Below, piece by piece: positions 12,440 to 64,000 of a stretch of 64,000 bases of DNA. The translations under genes were made by a program, and so were the position numbers. The DNA comes from Iphione sp. A-MEVVRFRX5 (lineage: Eukaryota). The first letter of the stretch is position 1, and each line of letters begins with the position of its first letter. The notes beneath the pieces were generated by a model. It saw only the letters and a program-made list of their open reading frames with translations. It did no database searches and was not told the DNA's origin. Location: contig OZ320322.1 of the NCBI GenBank assembly GCA_976226885.1, forward strand, positions 27,218,001 to 27,282,000, given 5' to 3'.

Positions 12440-12441
<2 letters not shown>

Positions 12442-12484: not shown

Positions 12485-12487
<3 letters not shown>

Positions 12488-12802: not shown

Positions 12803-13143
12803 GGCCCCCCAAAAAATCGGTGTGTTTCTGGTCACCCACCCTTACTTAGTAAAACCTCACCCTACCTAAACATTTTTTTGCCCCAAAGAGTTCCAATGCT
12901 GAATTTCCTTAGATATGGTTTTTCACAGCACATGTTTTTTTGTGTAAATCAGTAGAAAACAACTAAATCCATGGAAGTCCAGCAAAAAAACTGTAAAACT
13001 CATGCTAATTGGTCAAAATTCTTCATATTGTCTTTATTTTTATTGAAAACCAGAGGAAGAAAGTGGGAAAATTGATTAGAAATACCCCCTCCCTAACTAG
13101 GCTTTTGGCTGGTCGTTACCAGAAACACAGCTATTTTTTTGCC
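12803..13143. mobile_element. PIF/Harbinger (Tourist-like) MITE, ~340 bp
   Basis: Imperfect TIRs GGC..AAAAAA..G.TGTGTTTCTGGT.AC / GTTACCAGAAACACAGCTATTTTTTTGCC, flanked by a TAA duplication (12800-12802 and 13144-13146). Confidence 0.8.
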
Positions 13144-34369: not shown

Positions 34370-34864
34370 AACGCCCGCCTCCGAGGCGGGAAAATAATTA
34401 ATAGGGTTCGTTTTCTTCAAGCATAAACAGAACCCGGTATACCGGTGCAACACATCCATGTTTACCTATTGCACTGCCCTCTTGGCGTTTGCGCATTGGG
34501 ATTCCCCTGTGTTGGCGGGCACGGAGGTTTTGCGGTATGTATACGGCCGATGTGAGCTGGAGGGAGTTATACGTAGTTAGCGGCGTGAGCAGCTCGCTTC
34601 TGCGGCAGTAGTGGTGGTAGTTACCGCACGGCAAGGGCGCACGGCGAGGCCGAGGTGTCGGACACAAGCTTTCGAAGGAGACCGCGGACACTCTCAGACC
34701 TCATTTCGCAATCAACTTCTCTTACCTGGGCAGGGATTTTAACCTTCGCACGCACTGTATAGCTGATTTTTTTTCATTGCTGCGGCACACGGAGTGCCTT
34801 GTAATCCACGTGGATAGTGTGGACTGATAATAATTCACAGCAGCGCTAAGTAGAAGAGACCACC
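34370..34864 (+). promoter_or_regulatory. CpG-rich putative promoter / 5' UTR of the giant exon
   Basis: Local CpG enrichment, GC-box palindrome CCCGCCTC-C-GAGGCGGG (34374-34390), kB-like GGGATTCCCC (34498-34507) next to ATTGG. Directly precedes the ATG. Confidence 0.45.
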
Positions 34865-36696
34865 ATGTCCCGGGAACTTCCCGACGGAGCGGGAAGTTTA
34901 GGTGGAGCGGGGAGGTCAGGCCCACAGAGGGCCACCGTTTCGCATGCTTCTAAACCCAAAGGGCCACCCCCTCCCCCTCCTCCTACCCGAAGGACAGCCC
35001 CTCAACAACAGCAGCAGCAGCAGCGTCCAGGTATCCTGGAGTCCGCCCCGGTGGCAGCTAGCGGCGGCGGGCCGCACCCCAGAGTGACGCCCACGGCGCA
35101 TCCTTCAGACACGGCTTCTGCATCTTCGGCGGCGTCTCAGGTAGGTCAGTACTCCTCCTTCTCAGCCTCAGGCCCGGTCTCACTAAGAGAGTCGGAAGCC
35201 GAAGCTACTCGGTTACCAAGTGATGTAGTTTACTCCCCCGACTCGGCTCTCACATACTCTTTAACACCTGGAAGAAGTGAGAACGTTGGAGGAGTTGTGG
35301 TGGGGAACACTTCAGTCGGCAGGGCTTATTTTGGAGAAGGACAGGCTACCGGAGAGAGCCGGCAATGGTCCGCTTCTAGAGGTTTCACACAATCGTTTCA
35401 GTCTGATACGTCAGAAAGTCAGAAGCCAGGTGTTTATTTGGCACAGCATGAGGCTGGTGTTGGGACGCTAAAGCAGCCAGTCGCCGGTGCCACTGTAGTC
35501 GATAAGGAAGCCGAAAAAATGTCGTCTGCAAAATCTAAAGCGCCCAAAAGATCGCCGTCCGCGCGGGAACTGGAAAAGAAGTTAGAACTGCAAGGTTTTG
35601 TAGTTGTCTCGGATGAAAGTTTGCCAAAGCAACGTAGAAAAGATGAAATACCCAGTAGTGGTCTAGGTAAACAGCTTTGGCGACAACAGGAACAACATGT
35701 GGTCAGAATGCCGACGCAAGGTCAACTTCATGCAGGGGAAACGCGTCAGCAGGTCCAGATAGAGAGAGAAAGATTCTTTGAAGGCCAAGAAGAAAAACCA
35801 ATCGGAGAAGAACTAAGGAAAGGGACTGGTGTTGGTTCAACAGACAGAACAAAGAAAGAGGAAGAAAGGCCCAAAAGACAAGAAGAAGAGGAAGAAGAAG
35901 AGCCACGCCGGAGTGTCAAGGAATTGATAGCAGAACATAACAAGCAAGTAAGGTTATCCTCCTCCGGTTCAATGTCAGGTTCAGGCTCTGGCTTGGACCT
36001 GTCGAAGCAGACTTGGAGAAGCAGGACGTCGATGTCTTCATCGACGTCATCTCTGACATCCAGTGCTGAACACCTGTCTCAGCGGGAGGGCAAGCCGCCT
36101 TCCACCAGCAGACCACCAAGTGGCTTCGTCGAAACTGGAGCCGTCATGGCCGCAACGCAACAAGTGACAGTAAGCGAGTCCGAGCCACCTCAAGTAATGC
36201 AGGAAGCAGGCCCCGGGTGGGTGCAGCGAAATGTTGCCATGTTCGATCCCTCCAGTAGGGAACGACTGCGACTGTCACAGGTATATTCAGACGACGCTGC
36301 AGGCGCATCGTCGGAAGGCTCTACGTCAACAATAACATCGACATCGACGACAGAGACAGTGCAGCAGACATCGACATCACTCACACTGACAGGGGAGCTA
36401 ACTGCCCCGACAATTGGCGTCGGGCCACAGAAATCGCTCGATCAGAAGAAACATTCACAGAAGGTCACCTCCAGGTCGTCCAGCACGCACAGCGAACAGT
36501 CGCAGCAGGACGCCGAGGAGATTCAGAGTTATCACAGAGGTGTCGCGCCCGTGGGTGTAGGGAACATGGTACAAACGTCGCCCATTGCCATGGCTACAAG
36601 AGACACTCAGACGGACCGGACGCCCAGGGACAGCCCCATGAGTGTATCGTCTCCTCCCACGTCTCAACAACAACAGCAGCTGCAGTCCCAGCAGCA

Positions 36697-36735
<39 letters not shown>

Positions 36736-39700
36736 GCAGTATACCCCAATGGAGGGAGCAACTCAGCAGCAGGTGAGCGACTCAACTGATCTTCCAGGGG
36801 CAGTACAGCCTCCCGCCTCCCAGGCCCCCTGCATGACGAGCTCTGACATTGAGAGAGTAGAGGGCACGGGCCCAGTCAGTAAAGAGTCTCTGCCTCAAGA
36901 GGCCATTGCGGGGCAGACTTATAGCAGGGGAACGGAATACGGTGATAAATTGGAAATGGAATCATCAGCGGTTCCACCAGGGGAAGGGTTGGCACAAACA
37001 GCGCAGGGCGGGGCGCGTAGTGAGGTGGTGTCTGCAATGACTGTTCAGACAGGTGTTCTTGTGCCGCCTCCCAGCAAAATGCTAAAACAGGGTGATGGAG
37101 GGGAACATATACCGGGACAAAAACGTTGGCCGCCTGATGGAGACGATACGGGCCAACACAAAACCACCGCGACGCCTCCGCCTCTTCATGAGCCTCAAAA
37201 ACCTGCCGTTGCCATGGCGATTGGAAGCATTCCCAGTGCACATCAACAGCCGCCCGGCGCGGCCGTTGCCATGGGCACTGTCCCGGCGAGTTATGATGAA
37301 CAAATGAGAACGTTTGTAGGGGAGGATGGAGACGCTTTTCAAAAGGTTAAGGTGTCTGGAACCGTTCCAGATCCGTTAGAAATGACTATTGTCCAGCCAA
37401 AAGCTGACGTTGTTCGCTCTCCTCCGACGCATGGTAAAGATGATGAATTTCAAGCGGACTCCCAAGAAGAGAGACGAAAGATGGAAGCAACTGGGGAGCT
37501 GTCCTCAGAAGGTGTTGGTATCAAAACAAGGCCTATGGCATCGCACCCTTCACCCAGCCAAGAGATGCCCCAGTCTGCTCAGATAGAACAGACATTACCC
37601 ACAAATATGCCACCGCCACCTCCCGTCCCTATGAGAGTTTCATCCAGAACGGCAGAGACAGAATCACCCATACCCCGACCAGCTAAAAGGCCCTCCTCGG
37701 AAGAAAACGTTAAAAGGGCGCCGAAAAGGCCAACAGGTCCACCGCCCCCAATACCTCCTAGAAAGCCGAAGGTCAAGATACAGGACGGAAAGGTCGTTAA
37801 GGTTGAAAGTTCAGATGAGGCTCACCCGCAGGAGACCCCGGTATGTAGCAGCGGAGTGGAGCAAGAGGCTGCTGCCGACGACGACGACGTATTCCTTCCC
37901 CAATCGGCTGTCATCATAGAAGGAAGGACAGGGGCTCGAGTGGAGAGGAAGGATTCGCTGGAGGGCAGCGGTAGTCCCAAATCCAAGTCGGGATTAGATA
38001 TCTGTTGGGTACCTACCGATGTACAGCCGCATGTGCGGCACCCGTCCGACCTTGACAACGTCATCGAGTCCCCAGAGGAAGAAGAGGTCTTGTCTCGGGA
38101 GCACACTGTCACGGGAGCAGACGTTGTCGATGCTATCGAGAGAAAGATTGGCACCCAGAGTCCCACCACAGCGCAGATCATGACGAACGTGCTGGGGGCG
38201 GCCGGAGCGGAGCAATTACTAGGCCTCTCTGTCATCCCGGAGGTCGAGTCAGAGGACGAGGCCAAACTCGGTCGTAAAGCCAAAGGCGTGGGGACTGGCC
38301 TGGATCATCCTAGTGGTGTTGAAAAGCCTCAAGATAAGCCGATCACGGAGGCCGAGCCGAGCACTGCCGAGACGAAGTCGGCGCCGCAGGACGTCCCCGC
38401 ACCTGAGATGACTTCTAGCCTCGTGAGATCGGAAGGAGCGGCTTCCGACGACTTCGAGGTGGAGATCACCGGCGCCATCGAGGAGATGGCTCCTTTGCTG
38501 TCATCGGAGGACGACGGGGACGTCCTGGACGGCATGGACGACGAGCCCTACGTGGAAATCCCGGAGACCCCTGCAACCGGGGAGCAGGCCACTCGGCGGC
38601 AGTTCAGTCGCATCTGGGAGCTGCAGGGCCAGCCCAGCAGGGACTATGATGAAAGCAGCGCCTGTGTGGTCGACGAGCCGTCGTCACCGCTCGAGGCGGC
38701 TGCTAGCGAGGGCGTCAGGTACCACAGGCGGGAAAAGCTGCAGCTGTCAGGGCCAGGGCTACAGGAGGTAGCAATGGATGCAGCTGACAGTCTCTCCGCC
38801 GAACAGGCTGCCAGGGAGACTGCCTTGTATGAGGAAGCCATGGAAGTAGGCGACACGATCGGTGCTGATGCTCTACCCCCACCCAGACGGGAGGAGTCGC
38901 CTGAAGACGTGAAGAAGAAACCAGAAGAGATGGACATCGACTTGTCCACTGAGATGGGGAGAATGCAGGAGAAATTAACGGAGGAGCTTCAGTACACCAC
39001 CAACGAGAACAGGGATACCATGGAAGCTGAACCAATTGGCTACGACCAACCTGCACGGGACATGAAAGAACCGGACGATCGGTATACATTAGATGCAAAG
39101 TTAGAACAGGAGCTAAGGTCAGCGTCAGAAGAGTTGATCTACCAAACGAACAACGGGGTTGGTCCTCCTCACCCTCGTCCTCCTCAACGGGAGGATACTC
39201 AGGACATGAAGACGCAGGTGGTGGAGATAGAGGAGCAACATGAGGTGGAGAACGTGCACATAGAATACGTGCACTACACACCGGTAAAGAGCACACAGGT
39301 GCCACCAGCAGAACCAGCGAATGTCCTCGAACCTGAGAGTGCTCAAGGGGTACAACAGACGGGCCCTGATATTCCAGTGATACGCCATGACGAAGTATTG
39401 GACGACTCTACGAGAGAATATGTCCCTGCGTACGGAGATATGAATTTCTCTTATTTTTATGATGTATTAGCTGAGGATATGAGAATAAAAGCGGAAATTC
39501 TTTCCAAAAGCCGCGAACAGCTGCATTTTGTGGAGAGATCGGTGTATGAGTTAGATGACGAGGATTTGCCTTCCGAGCATCTCCTGTATCCGAAATCCAC
39601 GATGAAAGTCTCCAAAAGCGAAGAGGTTTTACTGGACATTGATGAAGAGGAAGACGTCAGAGGAAAAGACAGGCCAAAGGCAGACTCTACAAATGCGCTG

Positions 39701-42700
39701 AACTTGGAGTACACATTGTATAACATACCGCATTCGTTATCTGAGGATAACATCGTCTCACTTTGTAACACGGGATATAAAAGTGTGGAAGAACTCCGAC
39801 AGGAGATCGAAGACGAGAACCTGCCAGTGGAACGCCTGGAAATCGAGACGGGTACAATGAAGATTGCCAAAAGTGAAGAATTGCTCAATGTCAATGAAGA
39901 GGAAAAAGTTGAACATCTCATTTACGAACAATCTGTTATTCCGTACGAGGACTATGCCAGTAGCAGCGAGGATGCTGGTGCCGAGAAAATGGCTAAACCT
40001 GTTAAGCCAAAGATAGCAAAACCTGGTCGACTCACAAACGAAGAGAGGAGGAGAGAGCGAGTACTACGGAAGCTAGACGCCTACCGTCTGGCCCAACTTC
40101 GTCCCGTTCGATTCGTTCGAGGCGTTCCGGAAAGATTGACCGACAGTTTTTCTACCCTGGAAAAGAAGAAAAAGCCTAAGAAAAAAGAAGCTGACAACAG
40201 TACAACACCATTTCACGAGGTTGACCAACAAGTGCTGGAAAAGACTCCTCATCAGGAGATAGAACGGCTACCCGAGTATGGTAGGCCTTTACCTCTATCT
40301 ATTGACAGGCCCACAGCAGGGATGGAATTGAAGGACGAACCACATAAGATCATACAACAAGATCAGGCAGTACCTGAGCGGCCGACCTCCTTTGCCGCTC
40401 CGGCCAGGATCTCCGGGGTTCCTGACCCACGGTTCGTATCTGATACCCTGCAGCGGGAGAGCGATCTTAGAATAGAGCGGAGTCGATTAGAAGAAAGATC
40501 GAAGGAGTATTCACAATTACCAGAGGAGAGAATAATACAGCAGGAACAGGCAGTACCTGAACGGCCGACTTCCTACGCTGCCCCGACCAGGATCTCCGAG
40601 GTTCCTGACTCAAGGTTTATAACTGATAACCTGCAGCGAGATATTGACCTCAGAATAGAGCGGGATCAGCTAGAAGAAAAGCCAAAACTACCAGAGGAGA
40701 GAATAACTGTGGAAGATAAATTAGCTGCACCTAAACAAGATCAACTACAAAGGGAAAGAATAGTCCAGGGTGAAGTGGAGAGAATAGCATTAGATCGTGA
40801 GTTTGGGGTGATAGATAGGTCAAGGAGTGTTTCTCCACAGACAACATCAAAACCTAGTGATATGGACACATTCGAAGAAGCACTTCCCGGTGATACGGAG
40901 GAGGATTGGTCTGAAGTAATCGAGTCGGTAATCGACAGTCTTGAAGAAGACACACTGGATACCCATCTCAGGAAGCCTGTAGACAAAAAGGGCACACTAG
41001 TTGATCAATCTGACATGCTAGAAATAATTTCTGCTACTCCAGTATCACCAGATGATTACAGTATAAAGGGAGACACAGAACTATCAAAAGGTATCGAGGA
41101 AAGACCAGTAAGTTCACTGCAAAGACGAGAAGATGAAAGGACAATAGAAACAACGGCTGTTGGGGACATGATGGACGTGGACCTTGAGTTATCGAAACAG
41201 ATTGGACCAGTACAGGACTCCCTAGATGTACGCTTCAAAGAAAGGGGAGAAGACCAGGTATACGAGGCGAAATTCAAGGAAGAATCCTTATTACTGTCGA
41301 GAAGGGACGAAGAGCTTCCCATGAAACCAGTAGAGGCGGACCAAAAACCACCGTCCGATGTCATTCAGTCGCAGCCCGAACTGTATCAGGCCGGTTTTAA
41401 AACAGAGACATTAGCAGGTGACACACCAACGGGTGGGTTTTTACAGCTAGGAGGGCTTCACACACCACCAGCAGTCGACAGGCTCGAACAAGTCGGGGAC
41501 ACTGAAAAAGATCAGAGGGTAGAGGAAACAGACCGTCCCGCTGGGGAGGGTGACAATATGATTTCTAGTGTACCAGAAGCTACACTGATAGGGAGGACAA
41601 CAGAAGAAGGAATGTTGCTACAACCATCTAGGCTGGAACAGTATGTTGAAGATCCACTGGAGAGGTCGGGCATCATTTCTCCCAGACCCCATTCAATGGT
41701 AGTTGACGAGTATGTTGTAGACAGTCCTATCGTACCGGTGCTGGAATTGAAGGTGACACAGCAAGATCAGGCCATAGATGAACGACAGCCAGCGCCATTT
41801 GCTTTTGTAATGGAGGAGGAAAGCGCAGGGGAAGCAGACGTACTCGAGATTGAGCCTTCAACTGAACATCTTCAAACTGATGTTGAAAAATATCAGCCCG
41901 TACAAATTGTCCAGGAACAAAAGTCATTCGACGACGAGGAAGACGTCTTGATTAAGGAAGTTTTAGACGAGCAACAGTCAAAATTATCAGACGAAACGAA
42001 AGGGGAGGAGATAATTATCACTGAGGTACAGCCGCAAGATATTGACACGACACCCGACGGAGAAATACAAGTGACACGACCGGAGCTGTCCACGATGCAA
42101 CAGGAGCTTGGTGTTCCGATGGAGAAATCCGAGTTGATTTCTCCCCGGCCAGTGTCTTTGAATGTGGAAGAATCGGTGATAACATACCCGATCTCTGCAG
42201 GGAGTGACCTACAGATAAGCCAGGCTGATCAGTCCGCCCTTGAACAAAAATCATCTCCCATGGTATTAATGGAAGGAGAAACTATGAAATGGCCAGAGGC
42301 TTACACGGTACACCCATCTCTGGATGTACCAAAAAGGGACTTAGGTGCAGCTGAGGAAATCATTCAGACTAATAAAGTTCAGTTATCATCGCCAAAACAA
42401 TTTGCTCTGGAGCAAGATATTACCACTACAGTTGAAAGGCCAGCCACCATTCCCGGCAGACCCCCTTCAATGAATGTTGATATTCATATAGACAAAGACG
42501 TTTCTCAGGGAAAGGAAGATGTTATTGAAGGCAAGACATCGCTAGAGCAACTGGACAGTACAGCCGAATCAGATCGTATGATTCCTCACATTCCAATGGA
42601 AGACAAAAATGTTCCATTTCCTGAAACAGTGGCACTCTCTGCTGATAGTCAGACTGACGATATTCAAATACCTAAACCAGACCAACTCACTATACCAAAT

Positions 42701-45700
42701 CAGGAGGTAGTAATAGTACACCAACCTGATCAGTCTGTTTTGGCTCAAGAAGTGACACCAATCCAAACAACACAGGAAGAAATTATTAAAGAACCAGAGA
42801 CCATTCAAGTACAGCCATCAGTCGATACACTCGAGAAAGATGTTTTGAAGTATCAGCCTGAACAGATTACAGAAGAATTAGTTCCTGAGAAAGAGGATAT
42901 CCCAACTGAAAAAGTGGAGGACATTCCTTCTCCTGGTTTAAGCCAAGTTGATGTCAAGAAGGATGAGCATGTCTTAGATGTTGATCAATCTGAGCTGGTA
43001 ATAGAAAAAGTCTTTGAGACAGAAAAAGTGGAAATCAGTTGGCCTGAACAATCTGCTCTACAACAAGAGATGAGAGCCACAATTGAGAAATCAGAGATGA
43101 TTGCTCCACAGCCTTCACCTCTTCATCTCGATGAATCTATCATTCAACCTCCTGCTCCACAAGATAAAGATATCAAGATTAGCCAACCTGATCAGTCTGT
43201 TATGGCACAAGACGTGACACCCATCGCAACAACACAGGGAGAAATCATTCAAGAGCCAGAGACTACTGAAATACAGCCATCAGTAGATACTCTTGAGAGA
43301 GATGTTTTGAAATATCAGCCAGAACAAATTGCACAAGAAGTAATCCCTGAGAAAGAGGAAGCTGTTAGTGAAAGGTTGGAAGATATACTTCAGCCTGATT
43401 CAACAAAGGTTGATGTTACTGAAGAGGAGCTGCCACCAGTTTTAGAGGATAAGGAATTGCTCATAGCAAAACAAGCTGAACCTCAGAAGGTGGAGATCAG
43501 TTCACCTGAACAATCTGCACTTCCACAGGAGATGGGAGACACTATTGGGAAATCAGAAATGATTGCTCCACAACCTACATCTATTCATCTGGATGAATCA
43601 ATTGTTGAACCTACTCTTCCACAAGATAAAGATGTCAAGATCAGTCAACCTGATCAGTCTGTTGTGGCTCAAGAAGTGACACCAATCCAAACAACACAGG
43701 AAGAAATTATTAAAGAACCAGAGACCATTCAAGTACAGCCATCAGTCGATACACTCGAGAAAGATGTTTTGAAGTATCAGCCTGAACAGATTACAGAAGA
43801 ATTAGTTCCTGAGAAAGAGGATATCCCAACTGAAAAAGTGGAGGACATTCCTTCTCCTGGTTTAAGCCAAGTTGATGTCAAGAAGGATGAGCATGTCTTA
43901 GATGTTGATCAATCTGAGCTGGTAATAGAAAAAGTCTTTGAGACAGAAAAAGTGGAAATCAGTTGGCCTGAACAATCTGCTCTACAACAAGAGATGAGAG
44001 CCACAATTGAGAAATCAGAGATGATTGCTCCACAGCCTTCACCTCTTCATCTCGATGAATCTATCATTCAACCTCCTGCTCCACAAGATAAAGATATCAA
44101 GATTAGCCAACCTGATCAGTCTGTTATGGCACAAGACATGACACCCATCGCAACAACACAGGGAGAAATCATTCAAGAGCCAGAGACTACGGAAATACAG
44201 CTATCAGTAGATACTCTTGAGAAAGATGTTTTGAAATATCAGCCAGAACAAATTGCACAAGAAGTAATCCCTGAGAAAGAGGAAGGTGTGAGTGAAAGGT
44301 TGGAAGATATACCTCAGCCTGATTCAACAAAGGTTGATGTTACTGAAGAGGAGCTGCCACCAGTTTTAGAGGATAAGGAATTGCTCATAGCAAAACAAGC
44401 TGAACCTCAGAAGGTGGAGATCAGTTCATCTGAACAATCTGCACTTCCACAGGAGATGGGAGACACTATTGGGAAATCAGAAATGATTGCTCCACAACCT
44501 ACATCTATTCATTTGGATGAATCAATTGTTGAACCTACTCTTCCACAAGATAAAGATGTCAAGATCAGTCAACCTGATCAGTCTGTTGTGGCTCAAGAAG
44601 TGACACCAATCCAAACAACACAGGAAGAAATTATTAAAGAACCAGAGACCATTCAAGTACAGCCATCAGTCGATACACTCGAGAAAGATGTTTTGAAGTA
44701 TCAGCCTGAACAGATTACAGAAGAATTAGTTCCTGAGAAAGAGGATATCCCAACTGAAAAAGCGGAGGACATTCCTTCTCCTGGTTTAAGCCAAGTTGAT
44801 GTCAAGAAGGATGAGCATGTCTTAGATGTTGATCAATCTGAGCTGGTAATAGAAAAAGTCTTTGAGACAGAAAAAGTGGAAATCAGTTGGCCTGAACAAT
44901 CTGCTCTACAACAAGAGATGAGAGCCACAATTGAGAAATCAGAGATGATTGCTCCACAGCCTTCACCTCTTCATCTCGATGAATCTATCATTCAACCTCC
45001 TGCTCCACAAGATAAAGATATCAAGATTAGCCAACCTGATCAGTCTGTTATGGCACAAGACGTGACACCCATCGCAACAACACAGGGAGAAATCATTCCA
45101 GAGCCAGAGACTACTGAAATACAGCCATCAGTAGGTACTCTTGAGAAAGATGTTTTGAAATATCAGCCAGAACAAATTGCACAAGAAGTAATCCCTGAGA
45201 AAGAGGAAGGTGTTAGTGAAAGGTTGAAAGATATACCTCAGCCTGATTCAACAAAGGTTGATGTTACTGAAGAGGAGCTGCCACCAGTTTTAGAGGATAA
45301 GGAATTGCTCATAGCAAAACAAGCTGAACCTCAGAAGGTGGAGATCAGTTCACCTGAACAATCTGCACTTCCACAGGAGATGGGAGACACTATTGGGAAA
45401 TCAGAAATGATTGCTCCACAACCTACATGTATTCATTTGGATGAATCAATTGTTGAACCTACTCTTCCACAAGATAAAGATGTCAAGATCAGTCAACCTG
45501 ATCAGTCTGTTGTGGCTCAAGAAGTGACACCAATCCAAACAACACAGGAAGAAATTATTAAAGAACCAGAGACCATTCAAGTACAGCCATCAGTCGATAC
45601 ACTCGAGAAAGATGTTTTGAAGTATCAGCCTGAACAGATTACAGAAGAATTAGTTCCTGAGAAAGAGGATATCCCAACTGAAAAAGTGGAGGACATTCCT

Positions 45701-51700: not shown

Positions 51701-54700
51701 ATACCTCAGCCTGATTCAACAAAGGTTGATGTTACTGAAGAGGAGCTGCCACCAGTTTTAGAGGATAAGGAATTGCTCATAGCAAAACAAGCTGAACCTC
51801 AGAAGGTGGAGATCAGTTCACCTGAACAATCTGCACTTCCACAGGAGATGGGAGACACTATTGGGAAATCAGAAATGATTGCTCCACAACCTACATCTAT
51901 TCATTTGGATGAATCAATTGTTGAACCTACTCTTCCACAAGATAAAGATGTCAAGATCAGTCAACCTGATCAGTCTGTTGTGGCTCAAGAAGTGACACCA
52001 ATCCAAACAACACAGGAAGAAATTATTAAAGAACCAGAGACCATTCAAGTACAGCCATCAGTCGATACACTCGAGAAAGATGTTTTGAAGTATCAGCCTG
52101 AACAGATTACAGAAGAATTAGTTCCTGAGAAAGAGGATATCCCAACTGAAAAAGTGGAGGACATTCCTTCTCCTGGTTTAAGCCAAGTTGATGTCAAGAA
52201 GGATGAGCATGTCTTAGATGTTGATCAATCTGAGCTGGTAATAGAAAAAGTCTTTGAGACAGAAAAAGTGGAAATCAGTTGGCCTGAACAATCTGCTCTA
52301 CAGCAAGAGATGAGAGCCACAATTGAGAAATCAGAGATGATTGCTCCACAGCCTTCACCTCTTCATCTCGATGAATCTATCATTCAACCTCCTGCTCCAC
52401 AAGATAAAGATATCAAGATTAGCCAACCTGATCAGTCTGTTATGGCACAAGAAGTGACACCCATCGCAACAACACAGGGAGAAATCATTCAAGAGCCAGA
52501 GACTACTGAAATACAGCCATCAGTAGATACTCTTGAGAAAGATGTTTTGAAATATCAGCCAGAACAAATTGCACAAGAAGTAATCCCTGAGAAAGAGGAA
52601 GGTGTTAGTGAAAGGTTGGAAGATATACCTCAGCCTGATTCAACAAAGGTTGATGTTACTGAAGAGGAGCTGCCACCAGTTTTAGAGGATAAGGAATTGC
52701 TCATAGCAAAACAAGCTGAACTTCAGAAGGTGGAGATCAGTTCACCTGAACAATCTGCACTTCCACAGGAGATGGGAGACACTATTGGGAAATCAGAAAT
52801 GATTGCTCCACAACCTACATGTATTCATCTGGATGAATCAATAGTTGAACCTACACTTCCACAAGATAAAGATGTCAAGATCAGTCAACCTGATCAGTCT
52901 GTTGTGGCTCAAGACATGACACCAATCCAAACAATGCAGGAAGATTTTATCAAAGAGCCAATGAGCACTGAAATGCATGCATCCGTTGATACCCTTGAAA
53001 AGGATGATTTGAAGTCTCAACCTGACCCAATTACAAGAGAATTCGATTTTGAGAAGGACGAAATCCCAGCAATAAAGGACAAGTTGCCAATGAAGACAAC
53101 AGAAGAAGAAATTGTGAAAGAAGCACCTATTGTCAAAATGGAAACTGAAACTAAAGTAACGTCTGTTGAGCCTAGACAGGTTGGTGATGGTTTTCCTCTT
53201 AAGAGTGACAAATCACAGATGGGAATATTAGATGGTCCTATACATAAAAGTCACGATCGAAAGGAGGAAGGCATAGTCCTTCTTGAACAACCCCCTGCAG
53301 TGAGAGATGAAATCATTCAAGGGGAAAAAATTGAAATTATTCGGAGTGAGGAGGTTATCACATCACCAGAATTTGGGACTACCATCGAAATGTCTGGCCC
53401 GATTCTCTCACCGCCAGAAGCAATTTGTCCTCCTCCCTTAGATATGGGTACTACCTGTGAAGCTGTACGTGAAGACGATATGCTCCAGAAGCAAGACAGC
53501 ACTGATATGGAAGCAGCAACCGACAATGTGCAACCTGATCTTGAGCAAATTCCACATCAGACTGTAGAGGAACTGGCTTTTGTCAAACCTTCGTCTCCAG
53601 CAGAGAAGGTAAAACAAGAGGAAATGCCACTGAAGAAAACCCTGAAACCTCTTCAGGACGAGCACACGGCGATGGTTTTAACAGCCCCACCTGAAAGTCC
53701 TGTATGGGTTACAGCTTTTGAGGAACTAGAGGTGCAAACTGAGTTGGCAACAGCAGATGTCAATGTAGAAGACTCAGTGCAAATGGAGACCATCATAATG
53801 CCGCACCAGATGGAACAGACAGTCAATATTCAATGTATGCGCTTGGAGGATCAGCTGGAAACATCTGAAGCAAAATCTGACATAGATGCAGTAGAAGAAG
53901 TGGAAGCAGCTATGGCAGAAGAGGAAGCGGTTCCTTTAAGTAACGCGATGAGCAAGGACAGAGTGGAACAATCCGTTCGAGAGATGCATCTTGATACTCA
54001 CCTTGAAAGGCCTGCAAGTGAACATTCAAGCATTGGGTTCGACGAGGAGGGAGCAAAACTACTCATTTCTGATGATGCTGTGATTGATGTTGCCACGAAA
54101 CATCCACCAGCGGTGCAGTCTGTATCAGAAATCCGTGTAAGCGATCACTATTGCATCACGGAGCAAGATAGAGAGGAGGTTATTTTGATTTTGGAGGAAT
54201 TAAATGCTAATCTAAGTACAGAGAGGGAGAGGGAATTGGATAAGGCATTGCGCAAATCTCCAATACAACAAACAACAATGGAATCCACACTGACTGAAGA
54301 AGAATCCATACAGATGACTGTTACTGAACAGATTCCGAGTGAACAACTCGTGGCACTGGAAACAACGTCAATGCAAGAGGATGAAGCAGTGTTGAAGGAA
54401 AGTGTGAGAAATCTATCATTGGCCGGTATGTCACTTACTGGATCACTGCCGTTAGAAACACCATCGAAGAAAATCGACCGAATCGAACAGTCTGTCAGAG
54501 AACAAGAAGTACACGTGACCCCAGAAGCAACTCCCTCTAATGAGTTTACAGCGGATCAATTCGTTGCAATCGAGGCAAGTATAGATCCAGTCGTTCAGGA
54601 CCACACTTTCTCGGATGAACACAAAGTCGGGGAGGCCAAACTTGATGCAACAGTAATCGAGTCTCATCAGACCGAGGTGGTCAGAAGCACAAGGAGAATC

Positions 54701-57700
54701 GAACAGTCGGTTATTGAGCAGGAATTAAATAACTTTGCAGTGAGCAGCCAAGATGTAAGTGAAGGCTCAGCTTTCCAGGAGTTTGTTGCTATGGAATCCC
54801 ATGTCAAATCTGAAAGCGGCGATGAAGCAGTCAAACAAGAAAAGGCAACTAGCGAGGGCCTCGTCGGCCTTTCTGTTACGTCGAAATCGAATACAGGAGG
54901 TAAGGTTGAAAAGAAAGCAAGGCCTGCTCAGGTCGTCACTGAGCAGACACTTGAGGAGATATTTGCTCTCAGGCCATCCATCAGTGACGAATCTTTGTTG
55001 AAAGAGTTCGTAGCGCAGGTATCGGTGACGGAGGAGGAAGGCCATCTTATCGAACAGGAACAAAGCGGGACGACAACCGACGAAGCGGAGGAGTCGCTGG
55101 TATCAGGAGCAACAGCCAGCGTTGTGAGCCAGCATTCTTCAATGGTCGAGCAACTCACCACGGAACAGTCACTACAAGGATACTTCAAGGAGGAAGAGTC
55201 ACTCCCACTGGAGACTCAGGCGGAGGAGCTGGAGAGCAAGCAGTACTCACCTGACACCAACTACATCAAGCGTATGATCATCCGGGCGATCGAGTTCACC
55301 GACGACCCGCACATGCAGAAACGGTACGAGACCTTCCTCAAGCAGACACCGACCAAACCGGTGAGCCGGAGGAAGTCCCGTAAACAGACGGAGGACGGCT
55401 ACCGGGTGAAGGTGGTGGAAGCCAAGCGGCCATCCGGCGATCTCCTGGAGTTGGACGTCAAGATAGAAACCCCCCCGGAGGAGGTCATTTTCCTGCCGTA
55501 CAAGAAGACCGAGGACATCAGACATGAGATTGCGCGGCCCTTGTCTGCCGTGGAGAGTCTACCCGACGACACTGGCAGTAGCAGCATAGAACCCTCGGAG
55601 CTGATCATGGAGGAATTCCGCTCGCAGAGTCCGCCGACGGACAGCTCCCAGCACAAAATGGAGGCCGTGGCCGTGGGTGATATGGGGGTTCCCGTGGGAA
55701 AGGTCGAGAGCGATCCTGATGAGCAGCTCTTCCTGCCGTACAAGTCGCTTGAAAATCGTCTGTCACAAGTGGCGCTAGACAGCGTCACCGATGGCCTCAC
55801 CACACCGACCATGACCAGCGACTTGGCCAAGTCACCCAGTCTTGTTCGTCCCGGCGTAGAGGCAGAAACGGACGAGGCTGTCGAAGCCGAGGGTTCGTTG
55901 TCCCTCTCAACAGGGTCCTATCAGGTGGACACCCTCGAGACCACATCGGCCGAATTCCGCGGGGATTCCCGAACGGAGAGTGCGTCGAACGTTGCCCCGG
56001 GCGAGCGTTTAATCCCAGGGTTGAACGTGGTGGAGGCGCCGTCATCCGATACAACGGAGGAAGCGGAAGTGATCGACACGTACCGAATGGCCTTCCAGGT
56101 GCATGACCACTGGTGTCCCATCGACGCCGACGCGACGGGGACCCTGTCGTCTCGATCGGAGGGGCAGCTCACCCAGAGTCCGGTCTACAGCGACGAGCGC
56201 TTCCCCCGCTACGGGCCTCCTTCGGAGAAGGACGATATCGACGTGAGTGACATCTCCTATGACATTGACGCCGATAACATATCCACCGACGAGCTGCAGC
56301 TGTCAGAGGTCGCCACAGATGACACCGAGCCGTCGTCGCCTCAGCTACGCCACCTGGTGAAGAGCAACACCTTCAAGGACCAGCCGAGGAAGAAGGCGCG
56401 TTCAGAGGCCCAGACCAGCCCCGGTAAGGAGACGGCGGCTGGGAGCGAGAAGCGCACGGGGACGGGGATGAAGACGAAGCGAATGCGACGTTTCATTGAG
56501 CGATGGGAGAAAGAGAGCGACCACAGCTCCACTTCCGACTCGCTCGACCCCCCGCGCGTGCCCAGTGCGGACGACGACGACGACGAATTCTACGATGACT
56601 CGACCCCATGGCCGTCGGATCCCCTCGGCTTTGGCGGCAAGTCGCTCATCGACCGGCACCTGGAAATGCTGAAGGCGGACGTGCAGCGGGAGACAACGCC
56701 AGAGGTGGAACTGCTCACCGAGGACCAGATGATGGAGGTGCTTAGGCAGGAAAATTATATGGGTAGCTCCAGTATCTCCACGGAAACCCTGGAGAGGAAC
56801 CTGCAGGAGCACCAGACGGACGATAGTTTGGGGGCTGAGTTGAAAACCACAGAAATAATTGGCAGGACATGGGAGCGTTCTATACCTCAGCATCCAGTAC
56901 CGGTTAAGATGGATCTCAGTTCATCGGGGACAGAATGTGAGGCATTCTCTAAGGTATCTCCTACAGTGGTTCTCACAGAAGAAATCCCTCCGCCTGAATC
57001 TTCAGCTGCACAGGCGCCACCTACTAGTACTATTGTAAAGCCAGATGCGGGAAGAGAAATAACGACGCGCTCCCTGGTGGAGCAAGGGGGAACATCGCGC
57101 AAGGAATCCATCGATGTGGAGGTAATGGAAGTCCTTGGCCGTGAGGCGCGTACTGAAACGAGTGGAATTCAACGCCATATATTTGAACCGCGGCAATTTG
57201 AATTCCACCATATTGAGAGTTCGCATATGTCATCATTTAAGACTGCAACCTCAGGCCAGATCGTTCGGCCGTTTGAGTGTTTCGGTCCGCCCGGCAACCT
57301 GCTCGTGGCTCAGCGTTCGGACCTGAGGCCCCTGGTGCAAGTGAGGCGTGACGGGCAGCTCACCGTCGACCGGCTCTATTACGGTTCACCGAGCACTGAG
57401 CGCACTGAGTCCTTCCTGGCGATGCCCTTCTCCCTGCCCGCACTGATAATACAAACCCCGAGGCCCCCACGCCCCAGTCACCCTCCCCCTGATGACGGTC
57501 CAGACCGTCCAGCGCAGCCTGGTCCTGACTGGCGGGACCCGCATGCCGACCGGGGCGGCGGCGGCGGCAGGGGTGGTGACAAAGGAGCACAAGTGGCAGG
57601 AAGGACAGGAGAGATCAGCAGTACTGGTGGTGGCTCATCAGTCTCGTATTCGTATTGTGATGCGGCGGGGGTGAGGTGCGGCCAAGGTGACGTGAGTGAA

Positions 57701-60700
57701 TGTACGCCCGGCCGCGGGGGGTATGCGACCGCCGAGCCCTACGGTCCTGGGAATGGACTGATGCGGCAAGAGAAATCCGAACCCCGGCCCTTCGCGTCTG
57801 CGCATTCCTCAGAAGGGACAGAGGTCACCATGGAAACCCTATCTAGGCCAGGGTCAAGGACGCCAGAGAGGGAGTACTCCGGAGGAAAGGACCAGCCACG
57901 CCGCAGACTGGAGGAGACTGTAGAATCATTACGTGTGGTGGAGGAGAGGAGGAGAAACGAGAAGGGGAAAGGGACGGCAGGATGTAGTGGCAACACTTCT
58001 ACGGATCACAACAAAGGCAACCAAACTGGTCACTCGTCAGGTACTGGCATACCCGCCGATAAGGGCATATCATCTTCGCCGAGTACTCACAGAGAGCAGT
58101 CGCTATTGGCGGGTGGCACGGCAGTCGGTTCATATTATGGCGGTTGTTATGGTAACAACCTGGAAGGAGACCGCCCTAGAAACCCTGGGTGTACTTTGGG
58201 TGTGGCCCTGCCCGGAGGCAGTGCGCAGGTAAACGTGTTACATACACAGTCGGCTACAGGTAAGCCAAAAACAGGAGGCGTGCGGGCCAACACCATGGAG
58301 AAACCGAAGCTGGGGGATCGGCTGGCCGGCCCCGAAGGCGGGAAGGACGAACGGAAGGAGCAGGGCCGAGGAGGAGGGAGGACACCGCTCCAGTATATGC
58401 ACCGTGACAGTCTGTGGAGCGAGGAGGAGGAGGAGCCGCCCGCCGGGCCATCCTCCGTACCACACTCATCCCAGCACCGACAGCAGGGCACGACAGCCAC
58501 CTCCTTCCCACAGGGCAACCAAGGTTACGAACGCCCGAACGTCTACGCCAGTACGCAGGGTAATCGGCCGCGCCTGGAGATAGATTACCCCATACCGCTG
58601 CCGACAGCGGAGGATCAGATTAATCCCCGTGATCCCGAACGTAGACACGGCCCAGAGACTGATAAGTCGCCAGACTCGCCCCAGCCCACTGTGAAATCCG
58701 ACAGCAGGCAGCTGGGGCCGAACGCCGCTGATGAAACCAATAACTTGCCCCTCGAGGGGCCTTATCGGCGTCAATACGAGTACATCGAGACATCGAGCGA
58801 GGAGGGGGACGAGGAAGATGTCATCCTCTATGATGTAAACGACATTGATGAAGAGCTGGAGGATGCTACTGAGATATGTGAGGCTCCTGTGGAAGACAGG
58901 GAGGATCCCAACAGCGGCGATGTAAGTGCCGACAGAGGGAAGGATCGAGGGACAGGAGGTGAGAGTGAGCATGAGGTGTCATTATATAGGACTGCTGTAA
59001 CAGGCTCCGAGCCACGCTATCAGCAGGAAGCCGCGGCGCCTGGAACACCTCCAGCATCTGACCAGGAGCTCTCCCAGGAGGCCTGGGCTGAACTACAGGA
59101 GGACTGCAGGCAGATAGTGTTGCCATGGCTACAATGTGACGAAGCAGGCATTTCTGCCTCATTCCATGCCAATGACCAAGACCATCGACACTGGCAGGAA
59201 GATGAACCGAAGATGGCAGAGAAGCAACAACCGCAGCAGATGGCAGAAGAGCCTAGAAGTGGCCGGCCGAATGGTGCAGATGTAAAGCACTCCACAGGGG
59301 ACCACCGCCCACAACGACCGCGGGCTGATAGTTCGAAAAGCAGACGAAAGATAGCGAAGGGCGCCTCCCAGCATTTATTTACCACTGAAGAGTCGTGCTT
59401 CGAGCCAGGTGCAGGCGCATCGCAAAGGTCACGTCTTCCAGCTCAACTCAGCAGCAGCAGCGACTCTGCAGGCCAGATGTGGACCGCAGCCGCGGAAGAT
59501 GCGTTCTCAATGTCTACAAAATCCCAAACAACCGTATCATTATCGGACGCGTCTCAAATATCAGGGATCAAGGGGAGGAGCCGGAACGACCGGGACAGCC
59601 ACATAGAGAGGCGACGTGCCACAGATAAGCTAGAAATGACGAACGTGTTTGGCAATGATGGGGAAATTCTTGGCCAAGTCAGCGAAGGAATACAATATGA
59701 GAGGGGGACAGATGGTGAGGGAGAAGCCTTTCTTAAAAGGCTTCCATTTCCACACAGCTCATCCGAGACAACTCATTTTCAGTTTTACGAGGAGCAGTTG
59801 ACTAGCAGAGAGCAGTTCCAAGAGAAAGTTACCGAACTATGCGAGGAAACGATGATGATCACGAAAGAATCTTCAGAACTTCATAAAACGGTCGATTATG
59901 ATCAGGTAGCGTTAAGTAGTCATGAAAGTAGCAGAATGGAAGTCCAAAAGACGCTCCACGAAGAAAAAACAACAGAGGCTATGTCAGTTTCCACCGATAA
60001 ACAGTCATTTACTACTGGGTTTACACAGAGTTCGTCCACGTCGAGCCGAGTGGAACTGACAAGTGGAACGAAACTGGCGGGCGGCGAACTACACAATTTA
60101 GGTTCTAGTGTTGATTTGCAGAAAACTGTACAGACAGACTCAGTTCAGAGGGTCTCGTCGCACAAAGACAGCCATGCTGTTGTTGAGGGGTTTGAAGACT
60201 TTGCTGGGGAGATGACAGAAATCACTCCCCGCCGCCGTAAGCTTGGCAGTGATACTGACCTACGGATGCGTATTGATAACGTTAAAGGGGCAGAGGCTTC
60301 GCTATCTGCCGACCGCCCCGTCCACCCGCCACCGTCCACAGGCGACTCCGCGCCGCTCGCCACACTCGACGACGACCTGGCCAGCTCCAGCGCCGCCGAC
60401 GATAGCGACGCCTGTGGACAGAAATCCAAGACGCCGCCAGGGAGCCAAGCCCTGGATGAGCGTGACGTCATTAAGACGTCCCATACCGCCAACAGTAGAA
60501 GGTACGCCGGGCGTCAGGACGCCGCGCGCCGTGACGTCACTGACGTGTCGAGCACTCTAACATCCGGTGACGTCACGATGGACGGCGCTGACGTGCATTC
60601 CGTTGCTTCCGGTTTTGCTTCCCTCCCGCCCTCTAGTGGTTGCGATTCGGGAGCGTTTGGCATGCCCCCAGAGATGGCACATAACCCTGCTTCTTCCGCC

Positions 60701-61042
60701 GGTAGTGTAACTGGTGGGTTGGATGTGCCGCCAGCTAGCGGCCAGTCTGGAACTAACTGCCTTGTTGACGTTGCCAAAGACATGCCTGCTGTTCATGCGT
60801 TTGACACCGTCCCAAATGTTAACCTCAATCCAAAAACTTTTCGAGCAGTGGAACTCCCCCATAGCGTAGGTAACATTGACTCAAACGATGAGGAAGAGGA
60901 TGATCTGAACTGGGAGACTAAATCTTGTGTTTCTAGTTTCTCTACCAGGTCAGGCATCTCTGAAGCCGACCTTGAGTGTGCGGTAAAGAGGCTAAAGGTA
61001 AGAGCTAATTTCGCTAACTTGGCGAGGACCCGTAGACCGTAG
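34865..61042 (+). CDS. Giant single-exon ORF (8725 aa); acidic E/Q/P/D/V/I/S/T-rich, predicted intrinsically disordered repeat protein; probably a giant first coding exon ending at 60997 and spliced downstream
   Basis: No stop over 26,178 nt, about 16 kb of it non-repetitive. ATG in CACCATGT context, with in-frame TAA at 34847-34849. Donor CTAAAG|GTAAGA at 60997/60998 falls exactly after codon 8711 (phase 0). No signal peptide, TM helix or recognisable globular domain. Confidence 0.9.
36663..36733 (+). repeat. Coding CAG/CAA repeat (polyQ: Q5-LQS-Q15)
   Basis: Near-pure CAG run. A second Q7 tract lies at ~35006-35026. Confidence 0.95.
40349..40710 (+). repeat. Coding duplication, 2 x 183 bp (61 aa; QAVPERPTS..AAP.RIS.VPD.RF...LQR..DLRIER)
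   Basis: CAGGCAGTACCTGA at 40364 and 40547, offset 183. Confidence 0.9.
41590..42724 (+). repeat. Diverged flanking copies of the array monomer (5' side)
   Basis: Motifs such as EKSELISPRPVSLNVEESVI, LQISQADQSAL and ERSGIISPRPHSM echo EKSEMIAPQPSPLHLDESII and KISQPDQSV. A partial degenerate copy also follows the array at 52889-~53050. Confidence 0.7.
42725..52888 (+). repeat. Coding tandem array: 11 x 924-bp dimer (A+B monomers, 462 bp / 154 aa each), near-identical copies
   Basis: CCTGATCAGTCT (PDQS) monomer starts at 42725, 43187, 43649 ... 52889. (52889-42725)/924 = 11. The K(D/N)EHVLDVDQ motif occurs 11 times. Confidence 0.97.
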
Positions 61043-63650: not shown

Positions 63651-64000
63651 GACTTTAAAACCCTTTGGGCATGATTAAAGGTAATGTGCTGCTGGTTATG
63701 GAAGGCATCCAATGATTATGACATAAAGGTTATATGTAGGTGTACATATCTTTCACATACTATCTACATTTTTATGACATGACTTCTATTATAAATGTAT
63801 GGGACTCACATTTGTAATATATTTTTTTAATACGGTTCCTTCTAACATGTACATATATACGAAACACTTCTTGTCAGGGATAAGCAAGCTGTTGGGCAAG
63901 AAAGGGCAATAAGGAAAGTAAACAATGTGGCAAATTGTAATCCACATACGTTTTCAACTGAGAGAACAACCCAGAAAAGCATAAACCTATTCGCTTCTTG

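What the first reader, a model, noticed from the sequence alone, without database searches (positions are those of the whole stretch)
34865..60997. A 26.1-kb giant first coding exon adding ~8,700 disordered residues to an unknown downstream protein
Seen: a stop-free frame for 26 kb, an in-frame stop just upstream of a CACCATG, no convincing upstream acceptor, and a phase-0 AAG|GTAAGA donor after codon 8711 with only 14 codons of read-through before TAG. Known: the largest human coding exons (MUC16 ~21-22 kb, TTN ~17 kb) are shorter, and the known giant cytoskeletal exons (ankyrin, titin PEVK) are internal. Inference: an alternative N-terminal ~0.95-MDa acidic spacer or spring appended to a conserved C-terminal module outside the window, in an invertebrate chordate. 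It has no signal peptide or TM segment, so it is cytoplasmic rather than mucin-like.
Basis: partly seen in the sequence, partly recalled or inferred. Interest (0 to 1): 0.9.

Follow-up and report, generated by a model that had tools for sequence, protein, structure and literature searches.

The report
Giant 26-kb acidic disordered coding exon
One uninterrupted 26-kb coding stretch encodes about 8,700 residues of very acidic, apparently unfolded protein with 22 near-identical repeats and no detectable relatives, probably a long flexible spacer like those in giant cytoskeletal proteins, though no RNA data could be obtained and its gene and function remain unidentified.

Summary
A stop-free frame runs 34865-61042 (8,725 codons), and the other five frames of that span carry 286-653 stops. 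An in-frame TAA lies 15 nt before a CACCATG start. An AAG|GTAAGA donor follows codon 8711, with 14 more codons before TAG.

The product is about 963 kDa, pI 4.4, net charge -924. It has no signal peptide, membrane segment, Pfam domain or confident AlphaFold fold. Its core is 22 in-register 154-residue units, arranged as 11 A/B dimers that are 99-100% identical. A versus B gives dN/dS 0.29. Older decayed copies flank the array.

Searches of 1.84 billion protein representatives, a 5.8-billion-cluster collection, the PDB, the ESM Atlas and metagenome contigs found no relative.

The donor is the best of 1,201 GT sites in the exon and sits 45 nt before the stop, so splicing to exons beyond the window is likely. 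Start-of-protein status is likely from sequence logic but has no RNA support, because no sequencing run was listed.

The main rival is an internal giant-ankyrin long exon. No ankyrin, ZU5, UPA or Death exon was found in the flanks.

Exons of this size and style are known (Drosophila Ank2-XL), so this is a large orphan member of a known kind. The scan also noted this array separately (s1-334941).

The parts
34712..34733 (+). Best candidate acceptor upstream of the start (pyrimidine-rich tract then CAG|G). If used, the exon would begin at 34734 with a 131-nt 5'UTR that contains no ATG.
   Evidence: Crude acceptor score in the 99.3rd percentile of all AG sites in the window; sequence read. Inferred, no RNA support.
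34847..34849 (+). In-frame TAA that closes the reading frame 15 nt upstream of the start codon.
   Evidence: the stop-free frame begins at 34850.
34862..34868 (+). CACCATG start context (A at -3); ATG at 34865-34867. The next in-frame ATG is at codon 219.
34865..60997 (+). Coding exon of 8,711 codons up to the donor (963 kDa, pI 4.4, net charge -924).
34865..41626 (+). N-terminal unique region (aa 1-2254). It has poly-Pro runs at aa 34, 916 and 959, PxxPxR/K motifs, poly-Gln at aa 47 and 601-623, a KKKK basic patch at aa 1767, and paired short repeats (MK[VI]xKSEE at aa 1580 and 1665).
   Evidence: no Pfam, NCBIfam or PDB match.
40352..40747 (+). Two tandem ~61-aa repeats (QAVPERPTS...DLRIER), aa 1830-1961.
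41627..42721 (+). Old, decayed copies of the 154-aa unit (aa 2255-2619).
   Evidence: Profile of the A/B units finds aa 2299-2452 at E 9e-15, plus partial copies at 2255-2289, 2453-2492 and 2497-2543.
42722..52885 (+). Tandem array of 22 units of 462 nt (154 aa) in perfect register, alternating A and B types, i.e. 11 dimers of 924 nt.
   Evidence: TRF: period 462, 22.3 copies. A-A identity 99-100%, B-B 98-100%, A-B 75% nt and 66% aa. Dimers differ by 0-12 nt. A vs B dN/dS is 0.29.
52886..53422 (+). Decayed copies at the 3' edge of the array (aa 6008-6186).
   Evidence: E 1e-21 for aa 6008-6069; weaker to 6186; 45-47% nt identity to array units.
53423..60997 (+). C-terminal unique region (aa 6187-8711), GC-rich with GC3 up to 0.75. 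It has three R[IV]EQSV motifs (aa 6366, 6539, 6611), two FLPYK motifs (aa 6876, 6956) and a short predicted amphipathic helix at aa ~6798-6826.
   Evidence: no homolog.
60995..61003 (+). Phase-0 splice donor AAG|GTAAGA after codon 8711.
   Evidence: Rank 1 of 1,201 GT sites in the ORF by a consensus weight matrix, and the only GTAAGA in the ORF. Inferred to be used; no RNA support.
61040..61042 (+). TAG reached after 14 read-through codons if the donor is not used.

Best explanation
This is a genuine protein-coding giant exon of 26,133 coding nt. Most likely it is the first coding exon of a multi-exon, lineage-restricted gene in an invertebrate-type animal genome. Shown: the frame is kept open by selection over its whole length. 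The product is a ~0.96-MDa polyanion (pI 4.4, about one net negative charge per nine residues) rich in E, S, P, Q, V and D, poor in aromatics and cysteine, and without a signal peptide, membrane segment, known domain or predicted fold. Its middle 3,388 residues are 11 near-identical A/B dimers of 308 residues. These were amplified or homogenised very recently from an older repeat that has evolved under purifying selection. Inferred: translation starts at the CACCATG at 34865. The exon is spliced at AAG|GTAAGA (60997/60998) to exons beyond the window, which would supply the anchoring or binding module. The polypeptide would act as a long, flexible, self-repelling tether, spacer or entropic spring, with a contour length of about 3.3 um (1.3 um from the array alone). 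Unequal crossing-over between 924-nt dimers would set its length. This is the kind of role proposed for the Drosophila Ank2-XL repeat array, MAP projection domains and the titin PEVK segment. Proline-rich PxxPxR/K and poly-Pro motifs in the N-terminal 1,000 residues could recruit SH3- or profilin-type partners.
For: A coding frame is beyond doubt: there are 0 stops against 286-653 in the other frames and 97 or more in shuffles, with periodicity in every 900-nt bin. Start: TAA at 34847 lies in frame 15 nt before CACCATG. All well-scoring AG sites (34733, 34762, 34817, 34840, 34843) lie upstream of that TAA, and the four AGs between TAA and ATG score at the 6th-70th percentile. No coding-like segment or Pfam-domain exon was found in the flanks. 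That covers 87 + strand stop-free segments of 60 aa or more over the 34.8 kb upstream, 80 of 40-59 aa over the nearest 18 kb, and 41 downstream. Splicing out: the best donor of 1,201 GT sites lies 45 nt before the stop (chance about 45/26,178 = 0.002), and the nearest AATAAA is 1.86 kb downstream. Disorder and charge: composition, net charge -924, 1.3% aromatics in the array, highest hydropathy 1.24. AlphaFold mean pLDDT is 32.4 and 33.6 with no residue at 70 or above over aa 1480-2679 and 6790-7989. There are no Pfam, NCBIfam or PDB matches. Repeat history. Selection on the repeat protein: A vs B dN 0.215, dS 0.731, ratio 0.29. Precedent for the spacer reading: PMC5135030 describes the Ank2 XL array of 93 x 76-aa repeats as a postulated molecular spacer, and the abstract of bioRxiv 10.1101/2022.04.03.486857 ties long exons to disordered regions.
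Against: There is no transcript, junction or peptide evidence: no RNA run was listed, so neither exon boundary is verified. No homolog was found anywhere, so conservation cannot support function and the downstream module is unknown. Single-sequence AlphaFold models are weak evidence for disorder. Variants among array copies are close to neutral in ratio (21 nonsynonymous to 7 synonymous, against a site ratio of 3.7 to 1), so recent constraint on individual copies is not shown. Copy number of a 10-kb array of 99-100% identical units could not be checked against reads. The donor and acceptor weight matrices were typed from general knowledge of metazoan consensus, not trained on this genome.
Confidence: 0.55

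Rival explanations
1. It is the long exon of a giant ankyrin: an internal exon entered through an acceptor just inside the open frame, lying next to ZU5-ZU5-UPA and Death-domain exons. The ATG at 34865 would then be fortuitous.
For: In Drosophila and C. elegans the ankyrin long exon sits in the largest ORF of the genome, and in Ciona in the second largest. The Ciona exon lies inside a slightly longer ORF. Such exons often carry species-specific repeat arrays and share an S/E/T/D/K/P-rich composition (PMC5135030). Here S+E is 21.9% and S+E+T+D+K+P is 50.5%, or 54.5% in the array, close to their ~25% and >55%. An acceptor within the first ~50 codons cannot be excluded.
Against: No Ank, ZU5, UPA or Death match (best E 0.012, all to unrelated families) appeared in 167 + strand stop-free segments upstream or 41 downstream, and no coding-like segment was found. 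The open frame starts 5 codons before a Kozak-type ATG, with no pyrimidine tract plus AG after the TAA. At 26 kb the exon is 3.7 SD above their mean of 8.1 +/- 4.9 kb. An unchecked scan note (s1-353886) places a 6.5-kb disordered exon behind an ankyrin-repeat module on another piece of this genome.
Confidence: 0.1
2. It is a complete intronless coding sequence of 8,725 residues, ATG 34865 to TAG 61042. The GTAAGA is not used as a donor and there is no downstream module.
For: ATG to TAG is a complete ORF. No recognisable exon was found in the 3 kb downstream. Giant proteins encoded wholly in one exon exist, AHNAK for example (general knowledge, not checked here).
Against: The best-scoring donor among 1,201 GT sites falls 45 nt before the stop, which is expected about 0.2% of the time by chance. 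There is no AATAAA or ATTAAA within 1.4 kb after the stop.
Confidence: 0.15
3. The exon is real but its size is inflated or deflated by misassembly of the 10.2-kb array of 99-100% identical 924-nt dimers, so 26.1 kb is not the true length.
For: Near-identical tandem units are a classic source of assembly error, and no reads could be laid.
Against: The array has 28 distinct variant sites with structured sharing: dimers 7 and 9 are identical, 8 and 10 differ by 1 nt, and others differ by 3-12 nt. It is in perfect register with no frame break, as expected from resolved long reads. Even without the array, about 16 kb of unique open frame remains.
Confidence: 0.1
4. It is a secreted mucin-like or matrix protein whose signal peptide lies in an unseen upstream exon.
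For: It is a large tandem-repeat exon, as in MUC4 (variable repeat domain of 7-19 kb; PMC2360313 abstract).
Against: There is no signal peptide at the ATG and no upstream exon was found. S+T is only 13.5% in the array and S+T+P 24%, far below mucin PTS domains. There are no N-glycosylation sequons in the array, and D+E is 23%.
Confidence: 0.03

Closest known systems
Drosophila Ank2-XL long exon (giant ankyrin, 1,200 kDa isoform)
   Same: It is a single exon of more than 20 kb that forms the largest ORF of its genome. Its core is a long array of highly similar tandem repeats (93 x 76 aa). It is acidic, rich in S, E, P, T, D and K, has no domains, and is proposed to be a molecular spacer organising axonal microtubules (PMC5135030, PMC6703079).
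   Different: The Ank2-XL exon is internal or 3' to ankyrin-repeat, ZU5-ZU5-UPA and Death-domain exons. Here the frame opens at a Kozak ATG just after a stop, and no such exons were found within 34.8 kb upstream. The repeat unit is 154 aa in A/B dimers rather than 76 aa. There is no sequence similarity.
Titin PEVK segment (entropic spring)
   Same: It is proline- and glutamate-rich, low in aromatics, repetitive and unfolded. Extensibility and length are set by repeat number (general knowledge).
   Different: P+E+V+K is 42% in the array, against about 70% for PEVK. PEVK is built from many small exons of ~28-residue motifs flanked by Ig domains. Here it is one exon with 154-residue units and no Ig or Fn3 match.
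Projection domains of MAP2/MAP4/tau and MAP1B/Futsch
   Same: They have a long acidic disordered N-terminal part followed by a small conserved C-terminal binding module encoded by later exons, and they act as spacers between cytoskeletal filaments (general knowledge).
   Different: No microtubule-binding repeats can be seen, because the downstream exons lie outside the window. This exon is 5-20 times longer. The only MAP1B_neuraxin hit was a chance-level E 0.013 in an upstream non-coding segment.
C. elegans ANC-1 and other giant proteins with near-identical long tandem repeats
   Same: It is megadalton-sized, with a few long repeats kept almost identical at the DNA level (general knowledge, not checked here).
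   Different: ANC-1 repeats are helical and spectrin-like, and lie between calponin-homology and KASH domains. None of these features was detected here.

Membership tests
Giant ankyrin long exon | Lies in an ankyrin gene, next to ZU5-ZU5-UPA and Death-domain exons on the same strand. | tested here: inconclusive
   No Ank, ZU5, UPA or Death hit in 167 upstream and 41 downstream + strand stop-free segments. An intron longer than 35 kb, or exons in segments below the 40-60 aa cut-offs, would escape this test.
Giant ankyrin long exon | Internal exon entered through a 3' splice site at or just inside the start of the long ORF. | tested here: not met
   In-frame TAA 15 nt before a CACCATG. AG sites after the TAA score at the 6th-70th percentile and lack a pyrimidine tract. 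This is sequence logic only, with no RNA.
Giant ankyrin long exon | Composition bias: S+E about 25% and S+E+T+D+K+P above 55% (PMC5135030). | tested here: inconclusive
   21.9% and 50.5% overall; 22.6% and 54.5% in the array. These are close but just under, and the bias is shared by many acidic disordered proteins.
Titin PEVK-type spring | About 70% P+E+V+K in ~28-residue motifs, flanked by Ig or Fn3 domains. | tested here: not met
   P+E+V+K is 35% overall and 42% in the array. The unit is 154 aa. There is no Ig or Fn3 match.
Mucin-type giant repeat exon | Signal peptide and PTS-rich, heavily O-glycosylatable repeats. | tested here: not met
   No hydrophobic N-terminus. S+T is 13.5% and S+T+P 24% in the array, and D+E is 23%.
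Alternative first exon of a spectraplakin or nesprin (scan note s1-335026) | Spliced directly onto the exon that encodes the start of calponin-homology domain 1. | not testable with these tools
   The next exon is not within the 3 kb downstream: no CH match in 41 segments. Sequence beyond 64000 is unavailable and no RNA runs were listed.
Intrinsically disordered giant-exon spacer (functional class, not a homology family) | No stable fold, high net charge, low hydrophobic and aromatic content, encoded by one very long exon. | tested here: met
   pI 4.4, net charge -924, aromatics 2.8%. pLDDT is 32-34 with no residue at 70 or above. No domain match. This is prediction only, with no biophysical data.

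The most novel reading that the evidence does not exclude
An orphan, lineage-specific megadalton polyanion that begins with the longest uninterrupted coding exon so far documented in an animal. Its length would be actively tuned by unequal crossing-over of 924-nt dimers, making it a copy-number-variable molecular ruler. The repeat array alone carries a methylation-type CpG-decay signature inside an otherwise CpG-rich exon, which would make the array a distinct epigenetic compartment within one exon.
Probability: 0.2. Interest if true: 0.65.

Novelty: new member of a known kind. Interest (0 to 1): 0.45.

Why it matters
If the boundaries hold, this is one of the longest coding exons described in any animal. 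It also encodes a protein with no detectable relatives among billions of sequences. Three things follow:
- It is a test case for how splicing and transcription machinery define a 26-kb exon.
- It is a natural example of a repeat-length-tunable disordered spacer.
- It shows that automated annotation and homology searches will miss megadalton orphan proteins.

Its biological importance cannot be judged until the downstream module, the expressing tissue and orthologues are known.

Tried and rejected
**Homology and family searches, all blank or uninformative**
- Pfam and NCBIfam on aa 1-2600, aa 6001-8711 and one dimer gave nothing, apart from a TraB match at E 0.17 taken as noise.
- The PDB sequence search gave only an E 0.66 hit, also taken as noise.
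- phmmer of aa 7512-8711 against 1.84 billion representatives gave 0 hits.
- Three word-seeded searches returned nothing. They used regions 1-2600 of the whole protein, 1400-2300 of the N-terminal 2,600 aa, and 187-1511 of the C-terminal 2,711 aa.
- The ESM Atlas, searched three times, returned only generic disordered look-alikes scoring 0.81 or less. These were rejected as leads.
- Metagenome contigs gave nothing, either by protein (last 300 aa) or by an exact 33-nt pattern from the A unit.
- Rfam gave nothing on the whole window.

**RNA and structure**
- One search for sequencing runs listed no run, so read laying could not be used.
- Two AlphaFold jobs gave low-confidence models. No fold search was run on them, because matches to such models are meaningless.

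**Flanking exons**
- A codon-usage and periodicity scan of both strands found nothing coding-like.
- Pfam scans of 208 + strand and 22 - strand stop-free segments found nothing.

**Other points**
- An array-wide third repeat level of 1,848 nt, as in scan note s1-334941, is not borne out. Only dimers 7-8 and 9-10 form such a pair.
- YIKRMIIRAIEF at aa 6800-6811 fits an AKAP-type amphipathic helix pattern. I noticed it from memory, could not test it, and do not claim it.
- The species could not be identified.

Full report

Yes, in every detail.
- The window holds a single ORF of 300 aa or more, at 34865-61042 on the + strand, 8,725 aa.
- Direct reading shows an in-frame TAA at 34847-34849 and CACCATG at 34862-34868. 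It also shows AAG|GTAAGA with the exon ending at 60997, and TAG at 61040-61042 after 14 further codons.
- The coding part up to the donor is 26,133 nt, or 8,711 codons, with no stop.
- The other two + frames of the same span have 405 and 653 stops. The three reverse frames have 286-431.
- Block shuffles of the two unique parts give 124 and 118 stops on average, and never fewer than 97.
- In each of the 29 bins of 900 nt the frame has 0 stops and every other frame has 3-35.
- Codon-position periodicity (chi2 15-164) exceeds the non-coding controls (1-14) throughout. It is weakest at 57365-58264 and 59165-60064.

The frame is therefore held open by selection along its whole length, not only within the repeats. 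The window contains no N.

**2. What does it encode?**

The 8,711-residue product has these properties:

| Property | Value |
|---|---|
| Mass | 963 kDa |
| pI | 4.4 |
| Acidic / basic residues | 1,751 / 827 (net charge -924) |
| Main residues | E 12.9%, S 8.9%, P 8.9%, Q 8.0%, V 7.5%, D 7.2% |
| Aromatic residues | 2.8% overall, 1.3% in the array |
| Cysteine | 0.36% |

- The N-terminus is not hydrophobic, and the highest 19-residue hydropathy mean is 1.24. So there is no signal peptide and no membrane segment.
- Pfam, NCBIfam and PDB sequence searches found nothing on the N-terminal 2,600 aa, the C-terminal 2,711 aa or one repeat dimer.
- Single-sequence AlphaFold models were made for aa 1480-2679 and aa 6790-7989, chosen to include the most order-prone islands. 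Mean pLDDT was 32.4 and 33.6, with no residue at 70 or above and only a few short helices.
- This agrees with intrinsic disorder, although models made without an alignment are weak evidence.

**3. Repeat anatomy**

- Tandem Repeats Finder reports a 462-nt period, 22.3 copies, at 42721-53035.
- Anchoring on the QPDQS motif gives 22 units of exactly 462 nt (154 aa) at 42722-52885, with no indel. The units alternate between two types.
- A units are 99-100% identical to each other and B units 98-100%. A and B are 75% identical in DNA and 66% in protein.
- The real unit of amplification is therefore a 924-nt A/B dimer, present 11 times. Dimers differ by 0-12 nt.
- Dimers 7 and 9 are identical, and 8 and 10 differ by one base. 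That is a local 1,848-nt duplication, not an array-wide third level of periodicity. It only partly bears out scan note s1-334941.
- A profile of the units finds old decayed copies on both sides: aa 2255-2543 (best E 9e-15) and aa 6008-6186 (E 1e-21). An ancient repeat region was thus recently re-amplified or homogenised in its centre.
- A versus B gives dN 0.215, dS 0.731 and a ratio of 0.29. This shows long-term purifying selection on the protein.
- The 28 young variants among copies are 21 nonsynonymous to 7 synonymous. That is near the neutral site ratio.
- Smaller repeats lie elsewhere: two 61-aa units at aa 1830-1961, three R[IV]EQSV motifs and two FLPYK motifs.

**4. The two ends**

*The 3' end*
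- With a simple consensus weight matrix (my own, from general knowledge of metazoan donors), AAG|GTAAGA at 60998 ranks first of 1,201 GT sites in the ORF. It is also the only GTAAGA there.
- It lies 45 nt before the frame closes, which would happen by chance about 0.2% of the time.
- No AATAAA or ATTAAA occurs within 1.4 kb after the stop.
- I therefore think splicing to downstream exons is likely, about 0.8.
- The next exon is not recognisable in the remaining 3 kb.

*The 5' end*
- Any exon start upstream of 34847 meets the in-frame TAA.
- The well-scoring AG sites all lie upstream of that TAA. The best is 34733, at the 99th percentile; using it would give a 131-nt leader with no ATG.
- The four AG sites between the TAA and the ATG are poor.
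- An acceptor within the first ~50 codons cannot be excluded. One further in would need an improbably long chance-open stretch.
- The flanks show no coding-like segment on either strand.
- They also show no Pfam domain in 167 upstream and 41 downstream + strand segments, or in 22 - strand segments.
- I put first-coding-exon status at about 0.7-0.75.
- No RNA run was listed for this sequence (none was listed, which does not mean none exists).

**5. Relatives**

None was found:
- phmmer of the last 1,200 residues against 1.84 billion representatives gave 0 hits.
- Three word-seeded searches over different regions and length classes gave nothing.
- The ESM Atlas gave only generic disordered look-alikes scoring 0.81 or less.
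- Metagenome contigs gave nothing by protein or by an exact 33-nt repeat pattern.

Not even the query's own product turned up in these protein searches. The species therefore seems absent from them, and fast-evolving disordered sequence would hide distant orthologues.

CpG observed/expected of 0.7-0.9 across most of the window argues against a vertebrate-type methylated genome.

**6. What it most likely is and does**

The best-supported reading is a giant, lineage-restricted, polyanionic disordered protein segment that starts the protein and is joined to an unseen downstream module.
- By analogy it would work as a long flexible tether, spacer or entropic spring. This is inference, not demonstration.
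- Its contour length is about 3.3 um, with 1.3 um from the array (at 0.38 nm per residue).
- Recombination between identical 924-nt dimers could readily change its length.
- Proline-rich motifs at aa 34-40, 916-924 and 959-966 are candidate SH3- or profilin-type docking sites.

**7. Rivals**

- *Giant-ankyrin long exon.* This is the most serious rival.
  - For it: Jegla et al. (PMC5135030) show that such exons sit in the largest ORF of the Drosophila and C. elegans genomes and the second largest of Ciona. They also show that these exons carry species-specific repeat arrays and are S/E/T/D/K/P-rich. Here S+E is 21.9% and the six-residue sum is 50.5%, close to their figures.
  - Against it: the stop-then-Kozak-ATG layout, the lack of an acceptor, and the absence of Ank, ZU5, UPA or Death exons in the flanks. 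An unchecked scan note also places another disordered exon behind an ankyrin module elsewhere in this genome (s1-353886).
  - I give it 0.1.
- *Complete intronless gene ending at 61042.* I give it 0.15 because of the donor statistics.
- *Misassembled copy number.* This is possible (0.1) but would not change the nature of the finding.
- *Mucin-like secreted protein.* This is unlikely (0.03): S+T is 13.5% in the array, there is no signal peptide and D+E is 23%.

**8. Comparison with the known, and novelty**

- The closest known system is the Drosophila Ank2-XL exon. It has a 21.2-kb core of 93 x 76-aa repeats, encodes a 1,200-kDa isoform, and has been postulated to be a molecular spacer (PMC5135030, PMC6703079).
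- Titin PEVK and MAP projection domains are functional analogues, but their defining features are not met. P+E+V+K is 42% rather than about 70%, there are no Ig or Fn3 domains, and no microtubule-binding repeats are visible.
However, exons of this size and style already exist in invertebrates.
- I therefore class this as a new, orphan member of a known kind, notable for its size, its N-terminal position and its very young 308-residue dimer array. Interest is 0.45.

**9. Noticed besides**

- Within this single exon, the array has CpG observed/expected of 0.12, with TpG 1.42, CpA 1.33 and GC3 0.29.
- The unique flanks have CpG 0.79-0.88 and GC3 up to 0.75.
- This looks like methylation-type CpG decay confined to the repeat unit.

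Noticed in passing
window 42722-52885 versus 34865-41626 and 53423-60997: Inside one exon, the tandem array has CpG o/e 0.12 with excess TpG (1.42) and CpA (1.33) and GC3 0.29. The unique flanks keep CpG o/e 0.79-0.88 and GC3 0.5-0.75. This looks like methylation-type CpG decay confined to the repeat unit.
   Followed up: partly
window 49190-52885 (dimers 7-10 of the array): Dimers 7 and 9 are identical and 8 and 10 differ by 1 nt. This is a local 1,848-nt duplication rather than an array-wide third level of periodicity.
   Followed up: yes
window 11001-14000: A CpG-poor patch (o/e 0.09-0.35) in otherwise CpG-rich non-coding DNA, with a (GA)n/(TC)n microsatellite near 12300-12530 that reads as RERERE on the minus strand.
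   Followed up: no
window 1-34864 and 61043-64000: The flanks look gene-poor. No coding-like segment or Pfam domain was found on either strand over 34.8 kb upstream and 3 kb downstream. A GC-richer block lies at 6001-11000 (GC 0.47-0.52).
   Followed up: partly
window 55259-55294 (aa 6799-6810): YIKRMIIRAIEF has the hydrophobic-pair spacing of an AKAP-type amphipathic helix, and AlphaFold draws a low-confidence helix there. This could be chance in a protein of 8,700 residues.
   Followed up: no
window 58260, 54900 and 36773: Three further donor-like sites inside the ORF (CAG|GTAAGC, GAG|GTAAGG, CAG|GTGAGC) could serve alternative internal splicing. This is untestable without RNA.
   Followed up: no
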